Assembly: GCF_040938485.1 (NCBI RefSeq)
Contig: NW_027271061.1
Coordinates: 1,364,001-1,428,000, forward strand
Direction: 5' to 3'
Length of the DNA stretch: 64,000 bases
Source: Diadema antillarum
Lineage: Eukaryota
The translations under genes and the position numbers were made by a program. Below, piece by piece: positions 39,344 through 51,800 of the stretch (position 1 is the stretch's first letter; each line of letters opens with the position of its first letter). The notes under the pieces are model-generated. The model did not search any database. It was given only the letters and a program-made list of their open reading frames with translations, and was not told the DNA's origin.

Positions 39344-41738
39344 TGCGTATTATCGAGAGTTATTGGTTTGCTTTGTTTGTTTTAAAAGTGGATAATATCA
39401 AATGTAAACTTGCTTTAATCGCTAATTGCCGTAAGGTATATTAAGATTTGATTCTCAATACTGCTCGGGTCGCTTAGTTACGCTTAAGTTGTGATAAACT
39501 GCTATCAAAACTCGTTTATAGTCAACACCCCTGACCATTACTCGTCAAAAATACTCACTCCCTCAAGAAATAACAGCAAACAATGACAATATCATGAAAT
39601 GAGGTTGTCAATCATTATTCTAATTTTCTCCCCGTTTCTTTCATCATGTGTCATTTGATTGACATCCAATTTGGATGCATACTTATCGAATTGACATGTT
39701 TTCATGATCTACCTGGAGTTACTCACGTTTCGGAAAGCGTTTGTTGTAATTGTAGGCGTGTTATCACAGACATCCATGTACTGAGAGGGCTTACCTCGTT
39801 AATTATGGACTGTAGGTATGAACTGTATGATGACAACATGACNNNNNNNNNNNNNNNNNNNNNNNNNNNNNNNNNNNNNNNNNNNNNNNNNNNNNNNNNN
39901 NNNNNNNNNNNNNNNNNNNNNNNNNNNNNNNNNNNNNNNNNNNNNNNNNNNNNNNNNNNNNNNNNNNNNNNNNNNNNNNNNNNNNNNNNNNNNNATATTA
40001 TTAAGCATATCATACAATGTTTATATGTATATATTATGCTGATATCCTATAGTTTGTTGCATATTAGTACAAGGCCAACAGTTTCATCATTCCAGCAGAT
40101 AACTAGTTGGTGGAAAAGAAACCTTGCAGAAAAGAAATCATAAATTAATTGTAAAAGATAATGACACAACAAGGAGATGTTTTTTTTAAAGGGGTTTGTA
40201 ATGTCTCTAACCCGTGGAACGAGTGATTCATATGATGTATATTTGCACACGTCCCTTGGATGAAATGAATAATAATGATAGAATCTGATCTTTGGTTGTG
40301 TGTGGGCAGATGGGGGTGGGGTGGGGATGGGACGCAGACAGTCATGCGCGAGAAATGTAGGCAATATAAATTCGACCCAGGTTTCAAACGTAACATCAAA
40401 TTTCCCCGTAAGGTTGAACCTTTGTGCATTGCGTTGACATCAAGGACTCTAGAACATTTTCATCCACCACCTTCCTCCTCCTTGCAGAAAATTTAAGCGC
40501 CAAAGGTTGGTATATTTCACTTTTTAAACAGACTACTGATGTTTTCAAAGTAATCCCGATCTCTATCGTGACTAAAATGATTATCCATGACTATACTGCA
40601 GGCAAGATTTACAAGGCGTTATTTTATCAAAATGAGATAGTTGCCACATTTTTATGTATTCTGCATCTTTTTACATATGTAATATATTCTTAAACTTGAT
40701 GATTTTACGGCATTTTATGGCAATAAACGTTACTGCTTTCAAATTAGTATTTTTCTTCGAAACTATATGAGTGGCTTTATTAACAATCGTAATGTATTAG
40801 TTGGCGATGTAAAGGTACAACTGGGTCGTGTTCTCAGAAATCTAGAGCCGAAGATACTAGTAAATGAGTAATTGTTCTATGGCAAATGGGGTAAGATCTC
40901 GAAAATAATAATGTCCAAGTAAAAAAAAAATCGTGTCATCACAGCCCTGCAGCATTAGTTTCTAACTACATGGTATGTGTGTGTGTGTGTGTGTGATAAC
41001 TGGCAGCACGTAAAAGGCGAAAACTTCTTGCTAGAATGCTTGCACTGTCGCACGTCACCAGGCGTAGTAACTCTGCTATGTAATGTACAGCTGGAATGGA
41101 GCTTCATGATTTTTGCTTCCCAGCGAAGTGAAGATAAAAATAGAAATATGGTAGCATGATGAATATCACATTAATGTCATTATGCTAGGACCATCTTATC
41201 TATTGTAGCAAATTAAAATGGTTATAGATTACAAATTCTTGTGTTGTGATTGAACTCGTGGGTATTATTTGAAATTCCAACGAAGTTTATTCATTCATTT
41301 CCTTATCAAAACATAATATTTACACAAATCAAAACACAATTGCCGTGGTACCATTAATACATTTTGAATGAAGGGGGTGATAGAAAGCACACACGAGGCT
41401 TGTTGGAAATGATGCCCCCGCAAACAAGTTTGTCTTTTTATTTTCAATTCATCACATACAGCTCAATAATGCATTTGAACTAAATACATACTTTAAAATT
41501 AATCTATTGGATATATTGCATTGATTTCAACTCGGCAAAAGGGGAGAATACAGTGAGTTAAACAGTACAGTTGGCCCACAGTAAGCCCCTTCCGGAGGCA
41601 CGAATCTTTATTGTCCCTAAAAGTCATTTTATGGTACTTTTCCTTCTTTAGACAAATTTCACTGGCAAACCTAGTGCACAATCCACGACGTACTGTTAGG
41701 ATCAGCCACTGTGTGAATCTGCGCCGGTACTGGAACGT

Positions 41739-45607: not shown

Positions 45608-45876
45608 TCAGAGCTTGGTCTTCTCTTCCGCCGTCAGGGCCTTGATCTTGTCGTTGTAGTGCTTGGACATGAGTACCATTGTGATGATGAGAAGGGCACC
45701 GAGCGCGCAGCTGACGGCGATCAGGGCGATCTTGAACGTTTCTGCCTCTTCCTGAGCAGCGTCGATGCGCTCCAGCACCTCGGTGTCGAGACGGTCATCC
45801 CCGCCGTCGGGTCCCTCCGTCGGGTCGGGCTCCTCCGGCATCATCATCATGTCTTCCGTCATCGTCGACGCGTACG
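45608..45876 (-). CDS. Met-rich gene exon 13: stalk, transmembrane helix and 18-aa cytoplasmic tail
   Basis: ...IALIAVSCALGALLIITMVLMS-KHYNDKIKALTAEEKTKL*; phase 1 start. Confidence 0.9.
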
Positions 45877-48800
45877 CTGGGAGGAAAAAAAAACCGCATA
45901 AAAAAAAATCAATAACTGAAATTAAGATAATCTTGGAAAAAGGTATTTTAAACAGCTTGTAGCTATAACAGCTAGGTTTACTACCAACATTATTCATTCT
46001 TTTTATGTATTCCTTGGTAACAAGGGTCCTTCCCGCTAACTAGAAACCTTACCCGGGTCGTACCCAGCATACCAACAACTGATACTGCAGCATGATTCTG
46101 AGAATGGAAATTCACTGATTATTCATATCCATAAATTTGGAAATACAAATTATAGTTATGATGATGATCATATTGATTTGATTTAATTTTACTGGAAACC
46201 ACATAAAAATGCTACACATCATCATGCCTAGATACATGGTATAAAAAAAACAAACGATACGGAGAATGGAATGCTTTGAGAAGGGGAAATTGGAGCTGTT
46301 ACCTGCTAGTGACAGTGACCTCTGCAAACAAATGATGATGATAAAAATAACTTTACTTCTTACCAATAATAATCATTTTCATTTGCTGCGTTATCATTTT
46401 CATCACTCTCACTAAGGCTGTTACTATCACTGTGTTGTTTTATTGTCCCATTATTATCCCTCTTCTCCATCTCTTCTTCCTCCTTCTAATCATCATCACC
46501 ATCATCTCCTTCGTCATCACTGAGAGCCTTACCTGGTATGAAAGTGTAGAAGGCCTTGAAACCGAGATCCTCGGTGGCATAATCCGACTCGAACTTGAGG
46601 TGCAGATGCTGCCCGCTGGACCGGAAGACGTGAGGGATCATGGTTCCACAGAACGACTTGTCCCCGAGCTTTTCCCACCCGTCCTCGGTCTTGTCATAAA
46701 TCTACGGATAGACGGAGGGAGATGGGGATATAGCCACAAACTGTATTCTAGCGAGGGTGTAACATTTCGTAACGATCAGCGCGTGATTATAGAAGTGTTG
46801 CCTTTTGTAACAGCACAATTATCAACACCTTCTCCGCGGCACATGGAGCATGGGTACAGTGGAGAAATTCATGTTTCGTTCTCCTTCTCTAACTCCTCCC
46901 TAATAAACATACAGTAAGTAGAAACAAGTGAGTCGCATATTGAATGGGCACAGTCATTCATGATTTGGTTTCTTTTTTTTCTTTCTTTTTTTTTGCCATT
47001 CATCACGCTTGTACATTCACTGGAGACTTACCGTGAGGCTGTCGTGCATACACTGCGATTGCCACTGAGTGCGGAAGCGCAGCATGTAGACCGCCACATT
47101 GTGTCCAGGGGGCGCCACGAGATAGTGGTTGCACGCCACGTTGCTCGGGTAGTTCATCGGGAACATTGGGGAAGAGATGTGTCCGGGTCCACTAGTTATC
47201 GTCTCGTCACATGAATAGCCTGCAGAAAAAAGAATGGTTCGAAAAAGAAATCCCTTAGGTACACTTCACTATAATTATGACTAGAATTAATCATAATCAA
47301 CATACACATTTACGTATTACACTTCATGTTCATCTTGAACACCAACTGCAGAGGAGAACATTTCTATAGACAGCTGTTTTCGGCCTACATTAGTAATTTA
47401 GGATTTCATATTTCTGCTTGGATGCCTTAGTAGGGTAAGATTTCCGTAATAATGTATCACCTATCAAAAAGAATAGTTTGCAAGTTATATATTTCTCAAC
47501 CAAAAATCACGCACTGGTAACACTATGAACTCTAATTCACACTCATAAAGTAATGATTTCATATTATTTTATTATCAGCACATAATATTTTCATGGTTTA
47601 ATGGAGAGAGGAATTATTGAATAAAGTACACGATGCAGGAACTGGGCCCTTGTTGAAATGAAATAAACATGTCATTAGCAGGTTTGCCTAGGTCGTCAAG
47701 ACAAGTGCAGTCCCTCAAGTATATCACAGAACATAACTTGCGTTGGGGGCTCTAAATATGGTATTCTAGAATACAAATCCCTTTCAGGACAGTGAATACG
47801 TGTTACGTTAGAAACACTAGCAAACACAATGAGGTCTTTGCACTGAGGACTGCTAAGAGCATATTTACGTACGCTTTGTTGCGCCGTGGTATATTGCGAT
47901 ATAAAAGAAGCATTCAAAATAATGGAAAAATGTTGCGTTAGGAAGATCTTTCATGCGAAAAAATGTCGATGGTGCTTGTACTATGAATACGTGATCGTTT
48001 AATGAGTGTATTACCTGATCCATACTCCATGACGACACCAAGGTATTGTGCCTTGGTGGAGTACTGGTCGATGAGGGCGTGCGAGCCTTCCACAGCCACT
48101 ACTGATTCCTTGTGAAGCTCACTGAGACAGTGCGCTACTCCCCGTCCTTCTTTCGACTTCAGCTTCATGACAACCTTCTTCAGTTTGGCCATCAGGTATG
48201 CCTTCATCTCCATGGTAATCTCCTCACCCATGCCCTGGTCGTCCTCCATCTCGTCATCACCTTCCATCATCCCTCCTTCTTCCATCATAGCTTCCATCAT
48301 CATTCCCATTTCTCCGCCCATCATCCTTTCCATCATCTCACCCATCATCTCGCCCATCATTCCTTCGCCCATCATCATCTCGGACATCATCATCATCTCA
48401 TTATCCGTTTCCATGTAGCTTTCCTCCATTTCTTCGTCACCGGCCATCCCGCCAGTCATACCTTCGCCCATCATCCCTGGCTCTGACTCCTCCATGCCCT
48501 TCATGCTCTTCAACTTGTGCAAAATGTCCAGAATACCCGGAGGCAACATTGACAAGATATATTCCTCAAGCTTTTCTCCCATTTCCTCTTTATCCATCTC
48601 GCCTTGGTAATCCTTCATCATCTTCATCTTTTTCATGATTTTACCCAACAGCATCTCCAAAGGAGGAAGGTATCCTCCGCGAGCGACCATTAGCCCAAAT
48701 TTTGAGTGGATGTTGTTGCAACTGAAAGGTCCTCGTGAATCCAGAACGCGGAAGTGGAGCTTGTTGGTGGTGAGCGGAGACTGCATAATTGTCCACTTGT

Positions 48801-51800
48801 GATGACCATTGGACAATTTCTTTAGCATCATCAGAGCAAACAGCATCATGTGTTGCTTCTTGGTCATATTTTTCTTCATCATGGCCATCATCATGTCTTC
48901 ACTCATCATGTCTCCGCCCATCATATCCCCGCCCATCATAACTCCGCCCATCATGTCTCCGCCCATCATGTCCCCGCCCATCGTCATATTCCAGCCCATT
49001 GTCATGTTCCCGCCCATCATCATCATCATCATCTTCTCAAAGTATTCCGACATGTTGCACTTTCCCATCATGAGTATGGCGCCGATCATCTTGATTTTAA
49101 GAAGGACCTTGTGCTTCTTTTCCGTCAAGTTCTTCATCATGCCCTCCTCTCCCATCATCTCATCGTCCATGTCCATTCCAACCATGTTGGTCATCATCAT
49201 CGATATTGGGTCATCGTTACCCATCATGCCCCACACGTCTCCCATCATACTTCCTGCACCCATCATGACTCCTCCCATACCCATATCCATATCCATTCCC
49301 ATACTCATACCCATGTCCATTCCTCCGTCCATGTCTTCGCCCATATCCCCTTCATAATCCATGTAGTCAACCATGTACATGTTTGCCAAACTCAACTCCT
49401 TCACCAGTTCCTCGAAGGCGTTCGACATGTCATCGTCGTCCATCATGTCCTCCATGCCCGGCATGGGCGTGGCCTCCATGTTGCCATCTCCCATGTCTGC
49501 TTTGCAGCTGAAGTTGGACAGGACTTCTTTAACCTTATGGAGCACCCCTTTGGCGATTTCACTATGGTTACAACTCATCATGATGCCATAGAGGACCTTG
49601 GAGTGGTTCATCTTCAGCTCGTACAAGTGCTCCTTGACCCAAGTGATGTTCGCTTTGAGCGCCATCTTCTTCTCCATCAACATGGCCTCATCCATCATAT
49701 CTTCCATCTCCATGTCGTCACCTTCACCCATCATGTCTTCCATAGCACCCATCATCATCTTCTTCACCATCTGGAGGTGTTCCGCTTTTTCTCCGAGCTT
49801 CTCGAACGCCATCTTGTAGTGTTCGATCATGTCCCAGTCTGCGTGCGACACGAGGCACTTCTTGTAGGCGAGTTCGACCAACTGCTCGACCAGGGCAACC
49901 TTCAAAAACATCAATTGCAGTTTGTGATCGTCGATGTGCTGACCGATCCTGTGGCCGAGAACGTAGGAGGGAGACACGACGAGGCCCTTGGGTAGGTGCA
50001 AGTTGTACTTCGGAGAAAGGAGAGCTGTTGGGATACAAAATACGACGACCTCGTATGAAACAGTGAGCCCATTATACTTCTGTACCCGTTACGAAGTAAA
50101 CTTAATTCCTCTCATTGATATACACATTATTTTGTTGTTCAAGTTGTTGTTTTTTCACCATCTCCGTGTTGCATTTTGACGTATGGTCCTGACATGACGC
50201 TGTCCACCAATTTGTTATCTAAAATCTAATAACTATAGATTCCTATGAGCATTACGCTAGAATTATGTTTACAAACACTTAATTATCGTGATCATTGTGG
50301 CGGTGATATGCGGACAATTTGCGTACAGATGTATATAACGTAACCACTTACTGCAAAGAGTACCCGGCCCTTAAAGTGATTGTAAAATGAACAGTCAGAG
50401 TTGATTGCACAGAAACAAAATATTTGTTACATCTTTAGTAATTGTTGAATTTTCTCACATCATAGTCGCAATGATTACCAGAGACTAAGCAAGACAAAAA
50501 TGTACTATTGTGTATAGCGTCTATCATTTTGCTTTGACGTCTTTATTCAAATTAATGGTTCTTACATGGAGTTTTTTCTTTCATTGCAACTGATTGACAA
50601 TTGATTGCTTGATATTTCCGAGGATTAAGGGCAATTTGTTAATCTGTAGCGATTATGTCTGTACGTTTCGAACTATGCCTTTTTTTTTGTCAATGTGAAA
50701 ATTTAAAAAAATTAATTGGTCCTGTAAGTCATCTTTTCTCATGACTGAGACGGCTGGGCAAGGAGAGGTTTTTTTTTTGTCTCTTGATGTGCGTACCTGT
50801 AATCGGGGCGTGTTGTGGGAGCTTAAAGTGGAAGTGAATCCGTGGCATCTCTCCATCTTCGCTCTTCCCCTTCACCAGAGCCTTAGCGACGTCACTCAGC
50901 GACACGTCCACGTGATGGACCTCTACTCCCTTATCGGCGAGAACACAGAGCATCTTCGTCTTCTTCATGCCGTGGTCGTTGTCGTTGTCGTCCTCCTCCT
51001 CCTCCATCATCATCCCTTCGGCTTCCATCATTGAGTCCATCATTGAATTATTCATGAGGAAGGACCGATACGGGATGTAGACGTCGAAGCCAGAGCAGAG
51101 AAAAGGTGCCTTGAGACAACTGAGGGCGCACTCTTGAGGGGAGTAGACGCTATGATTGTGATACCATGTCTCGTATTTGATCGCTTGGTCGAAGTAGACG
51201 TTGAAGCCTTTTAGCGCTCCGTCTGGAAATAACAGAAAGTAGAAGGCAGTTTCATTTAAATGTTATGCATGTTCTAATCATCCTATCATGTCTTGCCAAT
51301 TGCTGATTGAAGTTAATCATATCGATCATTGGGAGTAATGGCAAAGAGTTATCAAAATGTTGCGAATGTTGGAATGACATGAATAAGACGTGAGTCTTCT
51401 TTTTTCGGTTGATCTGCTGATGGAAGAAAGTCTGATAGTACGATTAATCGATTAAAGAATGAGGGGGAGGGAGAGATGAAGAATGATGCTACTTACCACA
51501 GAAATGTTCGTCAGTTCCCAAGGTGCAATCCTTTTTCCCATCACACCGCTGGTCCTCCGGTACGCACCATCCATCTCCACACGAGAATTCTCCCATCTGA
51601 CACTGCTTACTCACTGCAAAGAATCAGTCATATGATGAACTCAATATTACCTTCTGTTAAATTCATTATTTTGTTTACATAAGTTATAGCCATTCCGGAT
51701 GTTTAAATGCCTTAACGTGCGCGTTGACAACTCATCATATTTATGTCTGCATGTATGTGTAGCTTACTAGCTTCATTTAGTTGATCACGTTCCATTCTGA

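What the first reader, a model, noticed from the sequence alone, without database searches (positions are those of the whole stretch)
48015..50024. Giant 2010-nt exon alternates acidic Met/Gly blocks with basic amphipathic helices
Seen: acidic low-complexity blocks (MEDMMGEGDDMEMEDMMDE; MMGEGMMGEMMGEMME) alternate with Lys-rich helical segments (KKHKVLLKIKMIGAILMMGK; KKQHMMLFALMMLKKL; KAYLMAKLKKVVMKLKSK). There is an internal LPP..l.il.K.mK repeat, scattered single Cys, His-rich patches and 9 N-glycosylation sequons. Inference: charge-blocked, Met-sticker patterning suited to self-assembly or coacervation, or a helical domain with disordered Met loops. Fragments such as ALLSPKY and KWTIMQSPLTTNKLHFRVL may be remnants of a split folded domain.
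Basis: partly seen in the sequence, partly recalled or inferred. Interest (0 to 1): 0.7.

Follow-up and report, generated by a model that had tools for sequence, protein, structure and literature searches.

The report
Methionine-loaded split domain, sea-urchin surface protein
This is a real 2-kb coding exon of a Diadema sea-urchin membrane protein. It encodes a rare, lineage-restricted extracellular module: short conserved strand-like pieces, possibly a CUB domain broken in three, separated by helices and by disordered loops that are one-third methionine. Its function is still unknown.

Summary
Window 50024..48015 (-) is one open phase-1/phase-1 exon with AG/GT boundaries. It encodes 669 residues with 20.6% Met. 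It equals residues 464-1132 of RefSeq XP_071490203.1, an uncharacterized Diadema antillarum protein.

The protein is a type I membrane mosaic: dead trypsin-like domain, WAP, LDLa, PAN, this module, CUB, TM.

A search of 1.84 billion representative proteins found only three clusters. A whole-gene tandem paralog lies about 7 kb upstream.

Four homologs share three Met-free islands, 62-67% identical between orthologs. They also share four invariant Cys, one co-lost Cys pair and conserved N-glycosylation sites. The five Met/Gly/Asp/Glu blocks (285 aa, 36% Met) diverge and are less Met-rich in the paralog.

Profile-profile comparison aligns the joined islands collinearly with CUB, scoring 24.0 against at most 21.0 in 460 controls. 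Pfam, HMMER and two AlphaFold runs give no support, so I rate "split CUB" at about 55%.

The Lys-rich segments are not amphipathic by hydrophobic moment. Coacervation was not tested. Function (soft-metal or oxidant buffering, mineral binding, or tolerated filler) is inference only.

Earlier scan notes flag a different Met-rich secreted protein elsewhere in this genome.

The parts
48015..50024 (-). Whole exon: 2010 nt, phase 1 to phase 1, 669 full codons. It is one extracellular module lying between the PAN and CUB domains.
   Evidence: Open frame and splice sites. Identical to residues 464-1132 of XP_071490203.1. Homologs P0001, P0003 and the tandem paralog keep the same single open exon.
49942..50022 (-). 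Island A (residues 1-27, LLSPKYNLHLPKGLVVSPSYVLG...). Met-free and conserved. Candidate for the first CUB strands (G.i.SP.Y).
   Evidence: 63% identity to P0001 with no gaps. Invariant residues are N7 L8 L10 P11 G13 V16 S17 P18 S19 Y20 L22 G23 in four sequences. hhalign places it on CUB positions 4-20.
48811..49941 (-). Insertion 1 (residues 28-404). Conserved helix-predicted segments carry 4 invariant Cys (56, 151, 173, 322) and most of the N-glycosylation sequons. They are interrupted by Met blocks 1-4.
   Evidence: AF2 predicts helices 33-58, 63-98, 106-150 and 153-170 at pLDDT 57-69, the rest lower. Cys and sequon conservation. Identity to P0001 is 35-58% across its segments.
49669..49767 (-). 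Met block 1 (residues 86-118; M12 E6 D5).
   Evidence: Nine of its 33 alignment columns are gaps against P0001.
49426..49500 (-). Met block 2 (residues 175-199; D7 M7).
   Evidence: Half of it is deleted in P0001.
49135..49371 (-). Met block 3 (residues 218-296; M27 G17 D14). Contains period-6/24 DNA repeats.
49189..49254 (-). Conserved 'W island' inside block 3 (residues 257-278, GSMMGDVWGMMGNDDPISMMMT).
   Evidence: G257 S258 G261 W264 G265 G268 D271 S274 are invariant in all four homologs.
48874..49035 (-). Met block 4 (residues 330-383; M25 G13). Includes (MMGGD)n encoded by a 15-nt tandem repeat.
   Evidence: TRF at 48889-48982: period 15, 6.3 copies, 87% matches. Composition.
48673..48810 (-). 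Island B (residues 405-450, NGHHKWTIMQSPLTTNKLHFRVLDSRGPFSCNNIHSKFGLMVARGG). Candidate central CUB strands (C.W.I...L.F..fD....C).
   Evidence: 67% identity to P0001. K409 W410 F424 R425 V426 L427 D428 G431 P432 F442 G443 are invariant in four sequences. hhalign places it on CUB positions about 25-49 in every sequence and for every junction choice. AF2 puts short strands here.
48151..48672 (-). Insertion 2 (residues 451-624). Holds the two LPP-helix motifs, Met block 5 and a Lys-rich helix (KAYLMAKLKKVVMKLKSK).
   Evidence: The helical part (residues 451-509) is the least conserved segment, at 25% identity.
48214..48495 (-). Met block 5 (residues 510-603; M32 E24 G18). Contains period-12/24/36 DNA repeats.
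   Evidence: TRF at 48282-48394. Composition. 33 gap columns against P0001.
48016..48150 (-). Island C (residues 625-669, ...GVAHCLSELHKESVVAVEGSHALIDQYSTKAQYLGVVMEYGS). Candidate last CUB strands (..C.....F.sD....GF..Y).
   Evidence: 62% identity to P0001 with no gaps. Cys632 is lost together with Cys435 in P0003. The match to the CUB C-terminal half is weak but in register: 12.6 against shuffles of 8.3 +/- 1.9.

Best explanation
What is shown. The stretch is a genuine, fully translated exon of a Diadema antillarum gene. The gene encodes a type I membrane protein with a signal peptide, a catalytically dead trypsin-like domain carrying an inserted WAP, LDLa, PAN, this module, CUB and one TM helix. 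The exon encodes one extracellular module of about 620-670 residues. That module is known from only four sequence lineages: this gene, its tandem paralog, and two unannotated sequences from other samples.

What is inferred (about 55%). The module is a CUB-like beta-sandwich. Its strands survive as three Met-free conserved islands (residues 1-27, 405-450, 625-669). Two loops have been invaded by insertions of about 377 and about 174 residues.

Nature of the insertions. They are built of conserved, probably disulfide-stapled and N-glycosylated helices. These alternate with five acidic Met/Gly/Asp/Glu low-complexity loops (285 residues, 36% Met). The loops are most likely disordered and grew by in-frame repeat slippage. 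The loop positions are ancestral, because the paralog has acidic, Ser/Pro-rich loops at the same places. The extreme Met loading is a lineage-specific shift on top of a family-wide Met excess of 8.7-20.6%.

How it most likely works (inference, low confidence). A rigid scaffold holds a polyanionic, thioether-rich flexible brush above the membrane. My ranking of roles is: soft-metal (Cu(I)-type) or oxidant buffering by Met about 25%; Ca2+/carbonate-mineral interaction about 20%; largely tolerated filler about 30%.
For: Exon reality. The frame is open and the splice sites are canonical. The exon is identical to RefSeq models on both haplotypes. The two haplotypes differ by 4 synonymous and 4 non-synonymous changes with no indels. 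The exon is 99.6% identical between haplotypes, against 85% and 98.8% for the flanking introns.

Restricted family. A HMMER search of 1.84 billion representatives gave only 3 clusters. Word searches added nothing. Pfam found nothing. A tandem paralog with the same gene layout exists.

Conservation pattern. The islands are 62-67% identical, against 25-58% for the segments between them. Four Cys are invariant. Cys435 and Cys632 are present in three sequences and both absent in P0003. Seven of the 9 sequons are shared with at least one homolog.

CUB-like reading. hhalign of the joined islands against 26 Diadema CUB domains scores 24.0 (P 8.4e-4), with islands A+B on CUB positions 4-49. The same register appears for all 28 junction choices (16.8-25.1) and for each sequence alone (16.1-22.0). 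Controls scored lower: 200 random segment triples reached at most 11.0; 200 column shuffles at most 21.0; reversed CUB 12.6; 60 shuffled templates at most 16.7. The extended alignment is collinear over CUB positions 4-108. The exon is a symmetric phase-1 module that abuts the next CUB exactly at its boundary.

Loops. They contain tandem DNA repeats, hold the most gaps and have AF2 pLDDT mostly in the 20s and 30s. Met content is 8.7% in the paralog, 13.5% and 15.1% in the other two homologs, and 9.5% in the rest of this protein.
Against: No standard method calls a CUB. Pfam gives nothing on the exon or on the separate islands, although equally short true CUB exons of the same gene score E 4.6e-6 and 0.049. 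A HMMER model built from the same 26 CUBs scores held-out CUBs at 66 and 53 bits but the one joined-island construct that appears in the listed output at 1.1 bits, within the shuffles; the other two are below that. The hhalign probability is only 24%.

I picked the islands by eye before testing them. Island C alone is weak (z about 2). The first CUB disulfide is absent.

Two AlphaFold runs failed, with mean pLDDT 37.5 and 36.9. The fragment co-folding job gave no verdict.

No expression data were available. Nothing here bears on function. (ATG)n microsatellites are common in this genome, and Met runs read as Asp runs in another frame, so part of the Met load may be mutational.
Confidence: 0.55

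Rival explanations
1. Orphan module. The conserved islands and helices form a new alpha/beta fold unrelated to CUB, and the CUB-like register is a coincidence of beta-strand patterns.
For: No Pfam, HMMER or PDB-sequence signal. The atlas look-up gave no usable hit. The hhalign probability is only 24%. Island C is weak. The W island at residues 257-278 is as conserved as the strand islands, and it has no place in a CUB.
Against: The joined islands beat all 460 controls and keep one collinear register in every sequence. The Cys pair sits where the second CUB disulfide would be and is lost jointly in P0003. The islands sit at the extreme ends of a phase-1 module slot that lies next to a true CUB.
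Confidence: 0.3
2. The Met blocks are functionless filler. They are ATG/GAT-type trinucleotide and short-unit repeats that expanded by slippage in tolerant surface loops, and only the scaffold matters.
For: Tandem repeats of period 6, 12, 15 and 24 lie inside the blocks. The blocks are the most divergent and gap-rich parts. The paralog has differently composed loops at the same places. (ATG)n arrays are abundant genome-wide, with about 29,000 overlapping matches. The +2 frame of the blocks reads poly-Asp.
Against: Met is also 9.1% outside the blocks and 9.5% in the rest of the protein, against 1.4% in other Diadema CUB domains. All four homologs stay Met-rich at only 28-43% identity. The two haplotypes show no length polymorphism. 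The MMG[DE]MMG[DE] coding motif occurs nowhere else in the genome.
Confidence: 0.3
3. One reading: charge-blocked 'Met-sticker' sequence that drives self-assembly or coacervation.
For: There is real alternation of strongly acidic blocks (up to 10 D/E per 20 residues) with Lys-rich segments (up to 7 K/R per 20).
Against: The region is the glycosylated ectodomain of a single-pass membrane protein flanked by folded domains. The basic segments are conserved, predicted helical and linked to conserved Cys, so they behave like a fold rather than stickers. They are not amphipathic.
Confidence: 0.08
4. Mineral-facing acidic module. The Asp/Glu/Met-rich loops bind Ca2+ or calcium carbonate on skeleton-forming cells, as proposed for the Gln- and Met-rich proteins of the mollusc shell matrix.
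For: The blocks are polyanionic, with 69 D+E against 6 K+R in 285 residues. The paralog loops are acidic too. The abalone shell matrix holds Gln- and Met-rich proteins and also WAP-domain proteins (PMC2989941).
Against: There are no expression or proteome data. A literature search found no Met-rich sea-urchin matrix protein. Met itself has no established role in mineral binding.
Confidence: 0.15

Closest known systems
CUB domain (Pfam PF00431)
   Same: It is an extracellular phase-1 module next to a true CUB. The joined islands align collinearly with CUB positions 4-108. They share the G.i.SP.Y, W.I...L.F..fD....C and G...EY landmarks and a Cys pair at the place of the second disulfide.
   Different: It is interrupted by about 377-residue and about 174-residue insertions. 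It falls below every Pfam/HMMER threshold. The first disulfide is missing. The fold could not be confirmed.
Extracellular 'Mets motifs' of CTR/COPT copper transporters
   Same: Met clusters in an extracellular segment. This exon has 28 MxM, 22 MxxM and 44 MM. CTR/COPT proteins carry N-terminal extracellular methionine-rich motifs (PMC4039008).
   Different: This protein has one TM helix and no three-TM channel with the MXXXM-X12-GXXXG motif. The blocks are tens of residues long and strongly acidic. Metal binding is untested. This is a resemblance in chemistry only, not homology.
Gln- and Met-rich proteins of the mollusc shell matrix
   Same: They are secreted or extracellular low-complexity Met-rich sequences in a calcifying animal, and WAP-domain proteins occur in the same matrix (PMC2989941).
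   Different: There is no sequence similarity. This protein is membrane-anchored and the Met-rich sequence is inserted into a conserved scaffold. It is from an echinoderm, not a mollusc.
Low-complexity insertions inside folded domains (for example the Asn-rich inserts of Plasmodium proteins; from general knowledge)
   Same: Disordered, repeat-derived inserts sit in surface loops of otherwise conserved domains. The same gene also has inserts in its trypsin-like and PAN domains.
   Different: Here the habit is specific to one gene family rather than genome-wide. The composition is Met/Gly/acidic. The inserts also contain conserved helices with Cys and glycosylation sites.

Membership tests
CUB domain (PF00431) | Scores above the Pfam gathering threshold (21.4 bits) | tested here: not met
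   No Pfam hit for the exon, for P0001, P0003 or the paralog, or for the three islands searched apart at E up to 10. The true CUB exons of the same gene score E 4.6e-6 and 0.049. The insert-deleted construct has no reference, so it was not sent to Pfam.
CUB domain (PF00431) | Profile similarity to bona fide CUB domains over the whole domain, in order | tested here: inconclusive
   hhalign of the joined islands against 26 Diadema CUBs: score 24.0, P 8.4e-4, probability 24%, collinear over positions 4-108, above all 460 controls. HMMER with the same CUB set gives no signal.
CUB domain (PF00431) | Conserved disulfides C1-C2 and C3-C4 | tested here: inconclusive
   No Cys at the C1/C2 places. Cys435 and Cys632 sit at the C3/C4 places in three sequences, and both are replaced in P0003. 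Some of the Diadema CUBs used as reference also have no Cys at the C3/C4 places.
CUB domain (PF00431) | Beta-sandwich fold of about 110 residues | tested here: inconclusive
   Two AF2 models had mean pLDDT 37.5 and 36.9. Only short strands were placed in islands B and C. Co-folding of the islands gave no verdict.
CUB domain (PF00431) | Module bounded by phase-1 introns in animal mosaic genes (general knowledge) | tested here: met
   Both ends of the exon are phase 1, and the next CUB starts at the following junction.
CTR/COPT copper transporter Mets-motif region | Three TM helices with MXXXM-X12-GXXXG, plus N-terminal extracellular Mets motifs (PMC4039008) | tested here: not met
   The protein has a single C-terminal TM helix and no Ctr Pfam hit. 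Only the Met clustering is shared.

The most novel reading that the evidence does not exclude
An echinoid-restricted gene family uses a CUB-like sandwich as a chassis to display hundreds of residues of acidic, methionine-rich disordered loops on the cell surface. The Met content, 8.7-20.6% in the module across paralogs and species and 9.5% in the rest of this protein, is itself the selected trait. On this reading the loops act as an extracellular thioether buffer for Cu(I)-type metals or oxidants. That would be a kind of surface protein not described in animals.
Probability: 0.15. Interest if true: 0.75.

Novelty: new variant of a known kind. Interest (0 to 1): 0.45.

Why it matters
A 669-residue extracellular segment with 138 methionines is far outside normal protein composition. 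Here it can be shown to be real, conserved in layout and restricted to a tiny family.

If the split-CUB reading is right, a small beta-sandwich can tolerate insertions five times its own size. That would be a natural example of a folded domain used as a display scaffold.

If Met content is under selection, the family offers a tractable case for asking what extracellular methionine does in a marine animal: metal capture, oxidant buffering or mineral interaction.

If neither holds, it is an orphan sea-urchin protein with repeat-derived loops, which is of local interest only. Diadema antillarum is a keystone reef grazer that has suffered mass die-offs, so uncharacterised surface proteins have some applied interest, but nothing here links this gene to disease.

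Tried and rejected
- **Pfam.** Searches on the exon, its islands, P0001, P0003 and the paralog gave nothing beyond chance.
- **ESM Atlas.** Feature look-ups of the exon and the paralog gave no usable lead: scores 0.80 to beta-helix clusters, with recognition below the level of known families.
- **PDB sequence profiles.** Island B gave none. Island C gave E about 0.05 to a 30-residue stretch of staphylococcal enterotoxin C, which I take as chance.
- **AlphaFold2.** It was run with a 3-sequence and a 4-sequence alignment. Mean pLDDT was 37.5 and 36.9, so the models are unusable.
- **Complex prediction.** The three islands as separate chains gave no verdict (score 0.00). This is evidence neither for nor against.
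- **Local comparisons.** Pairwise and 2-sequence hhalign comparison of the joined islands with the neighbouring CUB gave no signal. HMMER with a 26-sequence Diadema CUB model gave no signal.
- **Word search.** The search with the neighbouring CUB found no candidates.
- **Metagenome scan.** A scan for more homologs found none.
- **Genome-wide Met-doublet pattern.** It is swamped by (ATG)n microsatellites and is no more frequent than its reversed control, so it is uninformative.
- **Literature.** I found no described Met-rich sea-urchin protein, and the sample accessions of P0001 and P0003 appear in no held paper.
- **Rejected: amphipathic helices**.
- **Rejected: internal splicing or non-coding.** The frame is open in four homologs and RefSeq models keep the exon whole.

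Full report
**Observation**

On the minus strand an open frame runs from 50022 to 48016 (669 codons). It is preceded by the acceptor ...TTTTGTATCCCAACAG|CT at 50024 and followed by the donor ...GGATCAG|GTAATA at 48015. The exon is 2010 nt long, phase 1 at both ends.

The product has 138 Met (20.6%), 77 Gly, 67 Glu, 58 Lys and 46 Asp. By comparison, 26 CUB domains from the same genome contain 1.4% Met.

Five low-complexity blocks lie at residues 86-118, 175-199, 218-296, 330-383 and 510-603. Together they hold 285 residues with 36% Met, 69 Asp+Glu and only 6 Lys+Arg. The rest of the exon is still 9.1% Met.

Tandem Repeats Finder shows that parts of the blocks are still DNA repeats. One example is a 15-nt unit with 6.3 copies at 87% identity, which encodes (MMGGD)n.

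One descriptor fails. The three Lys-rich segments have helical hydrophobic moments no higher than their shuffles. They are basic-then-hydrophobic rather than amphipathic.

**Whose gene it is**

The exon is identical to residues 464-1132 of RefSeq XP_071490203.1, an 'uncharacterized protein' of Diadema antillarum. The genome reached as G000 has 1.75 Gb in 2963 contigs. This fits the draft D. antillarum assembly described in bioRxiv 10.64898/2026.05.24.727502 (1.73 Gb, 2,964 scaffolds) and evidently holds both haplotypes.

The other haplotype carries the full-length model XP_071509747.1 (1652 aa). Its parts, in order, are:
- a signal peptide;
- a trypsin-like domain with LTAASC and GDKGGP in place of the catalytic His and Ser motifs;
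- a WAP domain and a Met/Glu-rich stretch of about 180 residues inserted in that domain;
- LDLa;
- a PAN-like domain with a Met/acidic insert;
- this exon;
- a canonical CUB (Pfam E 1e-19);
- an acidic linker, one TM helix and a short basic tail.

The module is therefore extracellular.

The two haplotypes differ in the exon by 4 synonymous and 4 non-synonymous substitutions and have no indels. That is 99.6% identity, against 85% and 98.8% in the flanking introns.

I did not search any self-joined spliced model. The whole-protein information comes from the RefSeq proteins that the tools returned.

**Relatives**

The word-based search found one homolog, P0001, at 37% identity over the full length. 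It comes from an ENA metagenome contig, L001, that carries the same gene layout.

The exhaustive HMMER search of 1.84 billion representatives found only three clusters: the Diadema protein itself, P0001 and P0003 (33% identity; a Logan assembly, L002, again flanked by PAN and CUB exons). A further word search with the RefSeq protein and a metagenome scan added nothing. The source species of P0001 and P0003 could not be determined.

Searching the window's own genome revealed a tandem paralog. Its 3' end lies about 7 kb upstream of this gene's first exon, at G000:C173:1429773-1441000. It has the same exon-by-exon layout and a 619-codon homologous exon.

Pairwise identities are 43% for window against P0001 and 28-35% for all other pairs.

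**What is conserved**

In the two-, three- and four-sequence alignments three Met-free islands stand out: residues 1-27, 405-450 and 625-669. They are 62-67% identical between the orthologs and contain no gaps.

The helix-predicted segments are 25-48% identical. The Met blocks hold most of the gaps.

Cys56, Cys151, Cys173 and Cys322 are invariant in all four sequences. Cys435 and Cys632 are present in three sequences and both replaced in P0003, as expected of a disulfide pair. Seven of the 9 sequons are shared with at least one homolog, and one is shared by all four.

A short motif inside block 3 (GSMMGDVWGMMGNDD.S) is also invariant in its key residues.

All four homologs are Met-rich, at 20.6%, 15.1%, 13.5% and 8.7%. 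In the paralog the loop positions are filled by acidic, Ser-, Gly- and Pro-rich sequence instead. The loops are therefore ancestral, and the extreme Met load is a later shift.

**Fold**

By eye the islands follow CUB landmarks: G.i.SP.Y; W.I then L.F..fD then C with identical spacing to the neighbouring CUB; and G...EY at the end. I tested this in several ways.

*Results against the CUB reading:*
- Pfam finds nothing on the exon or on the islands searched separately. True CUB half-exons of similar length do score.
- Pairwise and small-profile comparisons with the neighbouring CUB are at noise level.
- I extracted 26 CUB domains from the genome and built a HMMER model from them. It scores held-out CUBs at 66 and 53 bits, but the joined islands only within shuffles.

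*Results for the CUB reading:*
- Profile-profile alignment (hhalign) of the four-sequence joined islands against the same 26 CUBs gives score 24.0 (P 8.4e-4, probability 24%). Islands A+B fall on CUB positions 4-49.
- The same register appears for all 28 junction choices (scores 16.8-25.1) and for each sequence alone (16.1-22.0).
- Controls were all lower. 200 random ordered segment triples from elsewhere in the module reached at most 11.0. 200 column shuffles reached at most 21.0. The reversed CUB profile gave 12.6. 60 column-shuffled templates reached at most 16.7.
- Island C against the CUB C-terminal half is weak (12.6 against 8.3 +/- 1.9) but in the expected register. The extended alignment is collinear over CUB positions 4-108.
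- The exon is a symmetric phase-1 module. Its first and last conserved pieces sit at the extreme ends, directly abutting the next CUB.

*Structure prediction could not arbitrate.* Two AlphaFold2 runs gave mean pLDDT 37.5 and 36.9. The fragment co-folding job gave no verdict.

The joined-island constructs, and a two-exon CUB from L001 used as a positive control, were built only inside local scripts. They were not sent to any database tool. The Pfam test of the joined construct was left out because the construct has no reference.

I rate the split-CUB reading at about 55% and an unrelated new fold at about 30%.

**Function**

Nothing here measures function. The following properties are shown:
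- The loops are extracellular, polyanionic, Met-rich and probably disordered.
- They are carried on conserved, glycosylated and probably disulfide-bonded helices.
- Met enrichment extends to the helices and to the rest of the protein (9.5%).
- Met enrichment persists across homologs that are only 28-43% identical.
- The two haplotypes show no length variation.
- The MMG[DE]MMG[DE] coding motif is unique to this locus in the genome.

These points argue that composition is not mere slippage noise. On the other side, (ATG)n arrays are abundant in this genome. Met runs also read as Asp runs in the +2 frame, so acidic and Met-rich repeats are mutationally adjacent.

There are chemical analogies. 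One is the extracellular Mets motifs of CTR/COPT copper transporters (PMC4039008). Another is the Gln- and Met-rich proteins of the abalone shell matrix, where WAP-domain proteins also occur (PMC2989941). These are analogies, not homologies. The defining features of CTR transporters are not met.

My ranking of roles is: thioether brush for soft metals or oxidants about 25%, Ca2+/mineral interaction about 20%, tolerated filler about 30%, coacervation under 10%.

**Novelty and verdict**

The family is uncharacterised, absent from Pfam, and so far seen in only four sequence lineages. At the level of kinds, however, it is a mosaic extracellular protein whose domains carry low-complexity insertions, with an extreme and unusual composition. 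I class it as a new variant of a known kind and give it moderate interest.

Earlier scan notes list the same gene's other oddities (dead protease, inserted WAP, Met/Glu insert). They also list a different Met-rich secreted protein elsewhere in this genome.

Noticed in passing
G000:C173:1429773-1441000 (L059, L060), just beyond the window's 3' end: A head-to-tail tandem paralog of the whole gene. It has a trypsin-like domain with an insert, LDLa, PAN with an Asp/Gly-rich insert, a 619-codon homologous exon, CUB and TM. Its loops are acidic and Ser/Pro-rich, with 8.7% Met.
   Followed up: partly
window 52873-53655, 54242-54448, 54709-55035, 56202-56495 (-): The trypsin-like domain is catalytically dead: LTAASC replaces LTAAHC and GDKGGP replaces GDSGGP. 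It carries an inserted WAP domain and a Met/Glu-rich insert of about 180 residues. The paralog has an insert at the same place.
   Followed up: partly
window 50729-51055 (-) and 45608-45997 (-): The PAN-like domain holds a Met/acidic insert (MNNSMMDSMMEAEGMMMEEEEDDNDND...). The juxtamembrane linker also holds a Met run (MTEDMMMMPEEP). Every extracellular domain of this protein except LDLa, WAP and the last CUB carries such inserts.
   Followed up: no
window 45608-58363 (-): RefSeq splits the gene on this haplotype into two models: XP_071490222.1 ('tryptase delta-like', 268 aa) and XP_071490203.1 (1340 aa). The other haplotype has one 1652-aa model, XP_071509747.1. The Diadema setosum model XP_072176478.1 is a 233-aa fragment.
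   Followed up: partly
window 2303-2435, 10084-10221, 39843-39994, 57438-57575: There are four runs of N, each 133-152 bases. The last lies in an intron of this gene. I left them as they are.
   Followed up: no
window 48214-49767 (-), frame +2: The Met blocks read as poly-Asp/Gly/Arg/His in the +2 frame, because ATGATG overlaps GATGAT. Met-rich and Asp-rich repeats are therefore one frameshift apart. (ATG)n arrays give about 29,000 overlapping pattern matches genome-wide, fewer than the reversed control.
   Followed up: partly
L002:1479-3233 (P0003): This homolog has replaced both Cys435 and Cys632 while keeping the four other conserved Cys. This suggests that Cys435-Cys632 is a dispensable disulfide.
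   Followed up: partly
window 52386-52760: The intron holds long simple-sequence arrays. On one strand they read as poly-Leu/Ser and on the other as poly-Asn/Asp/Ile/Met ORFs. They are probably non-coding microsatellites.
   Followed up: no
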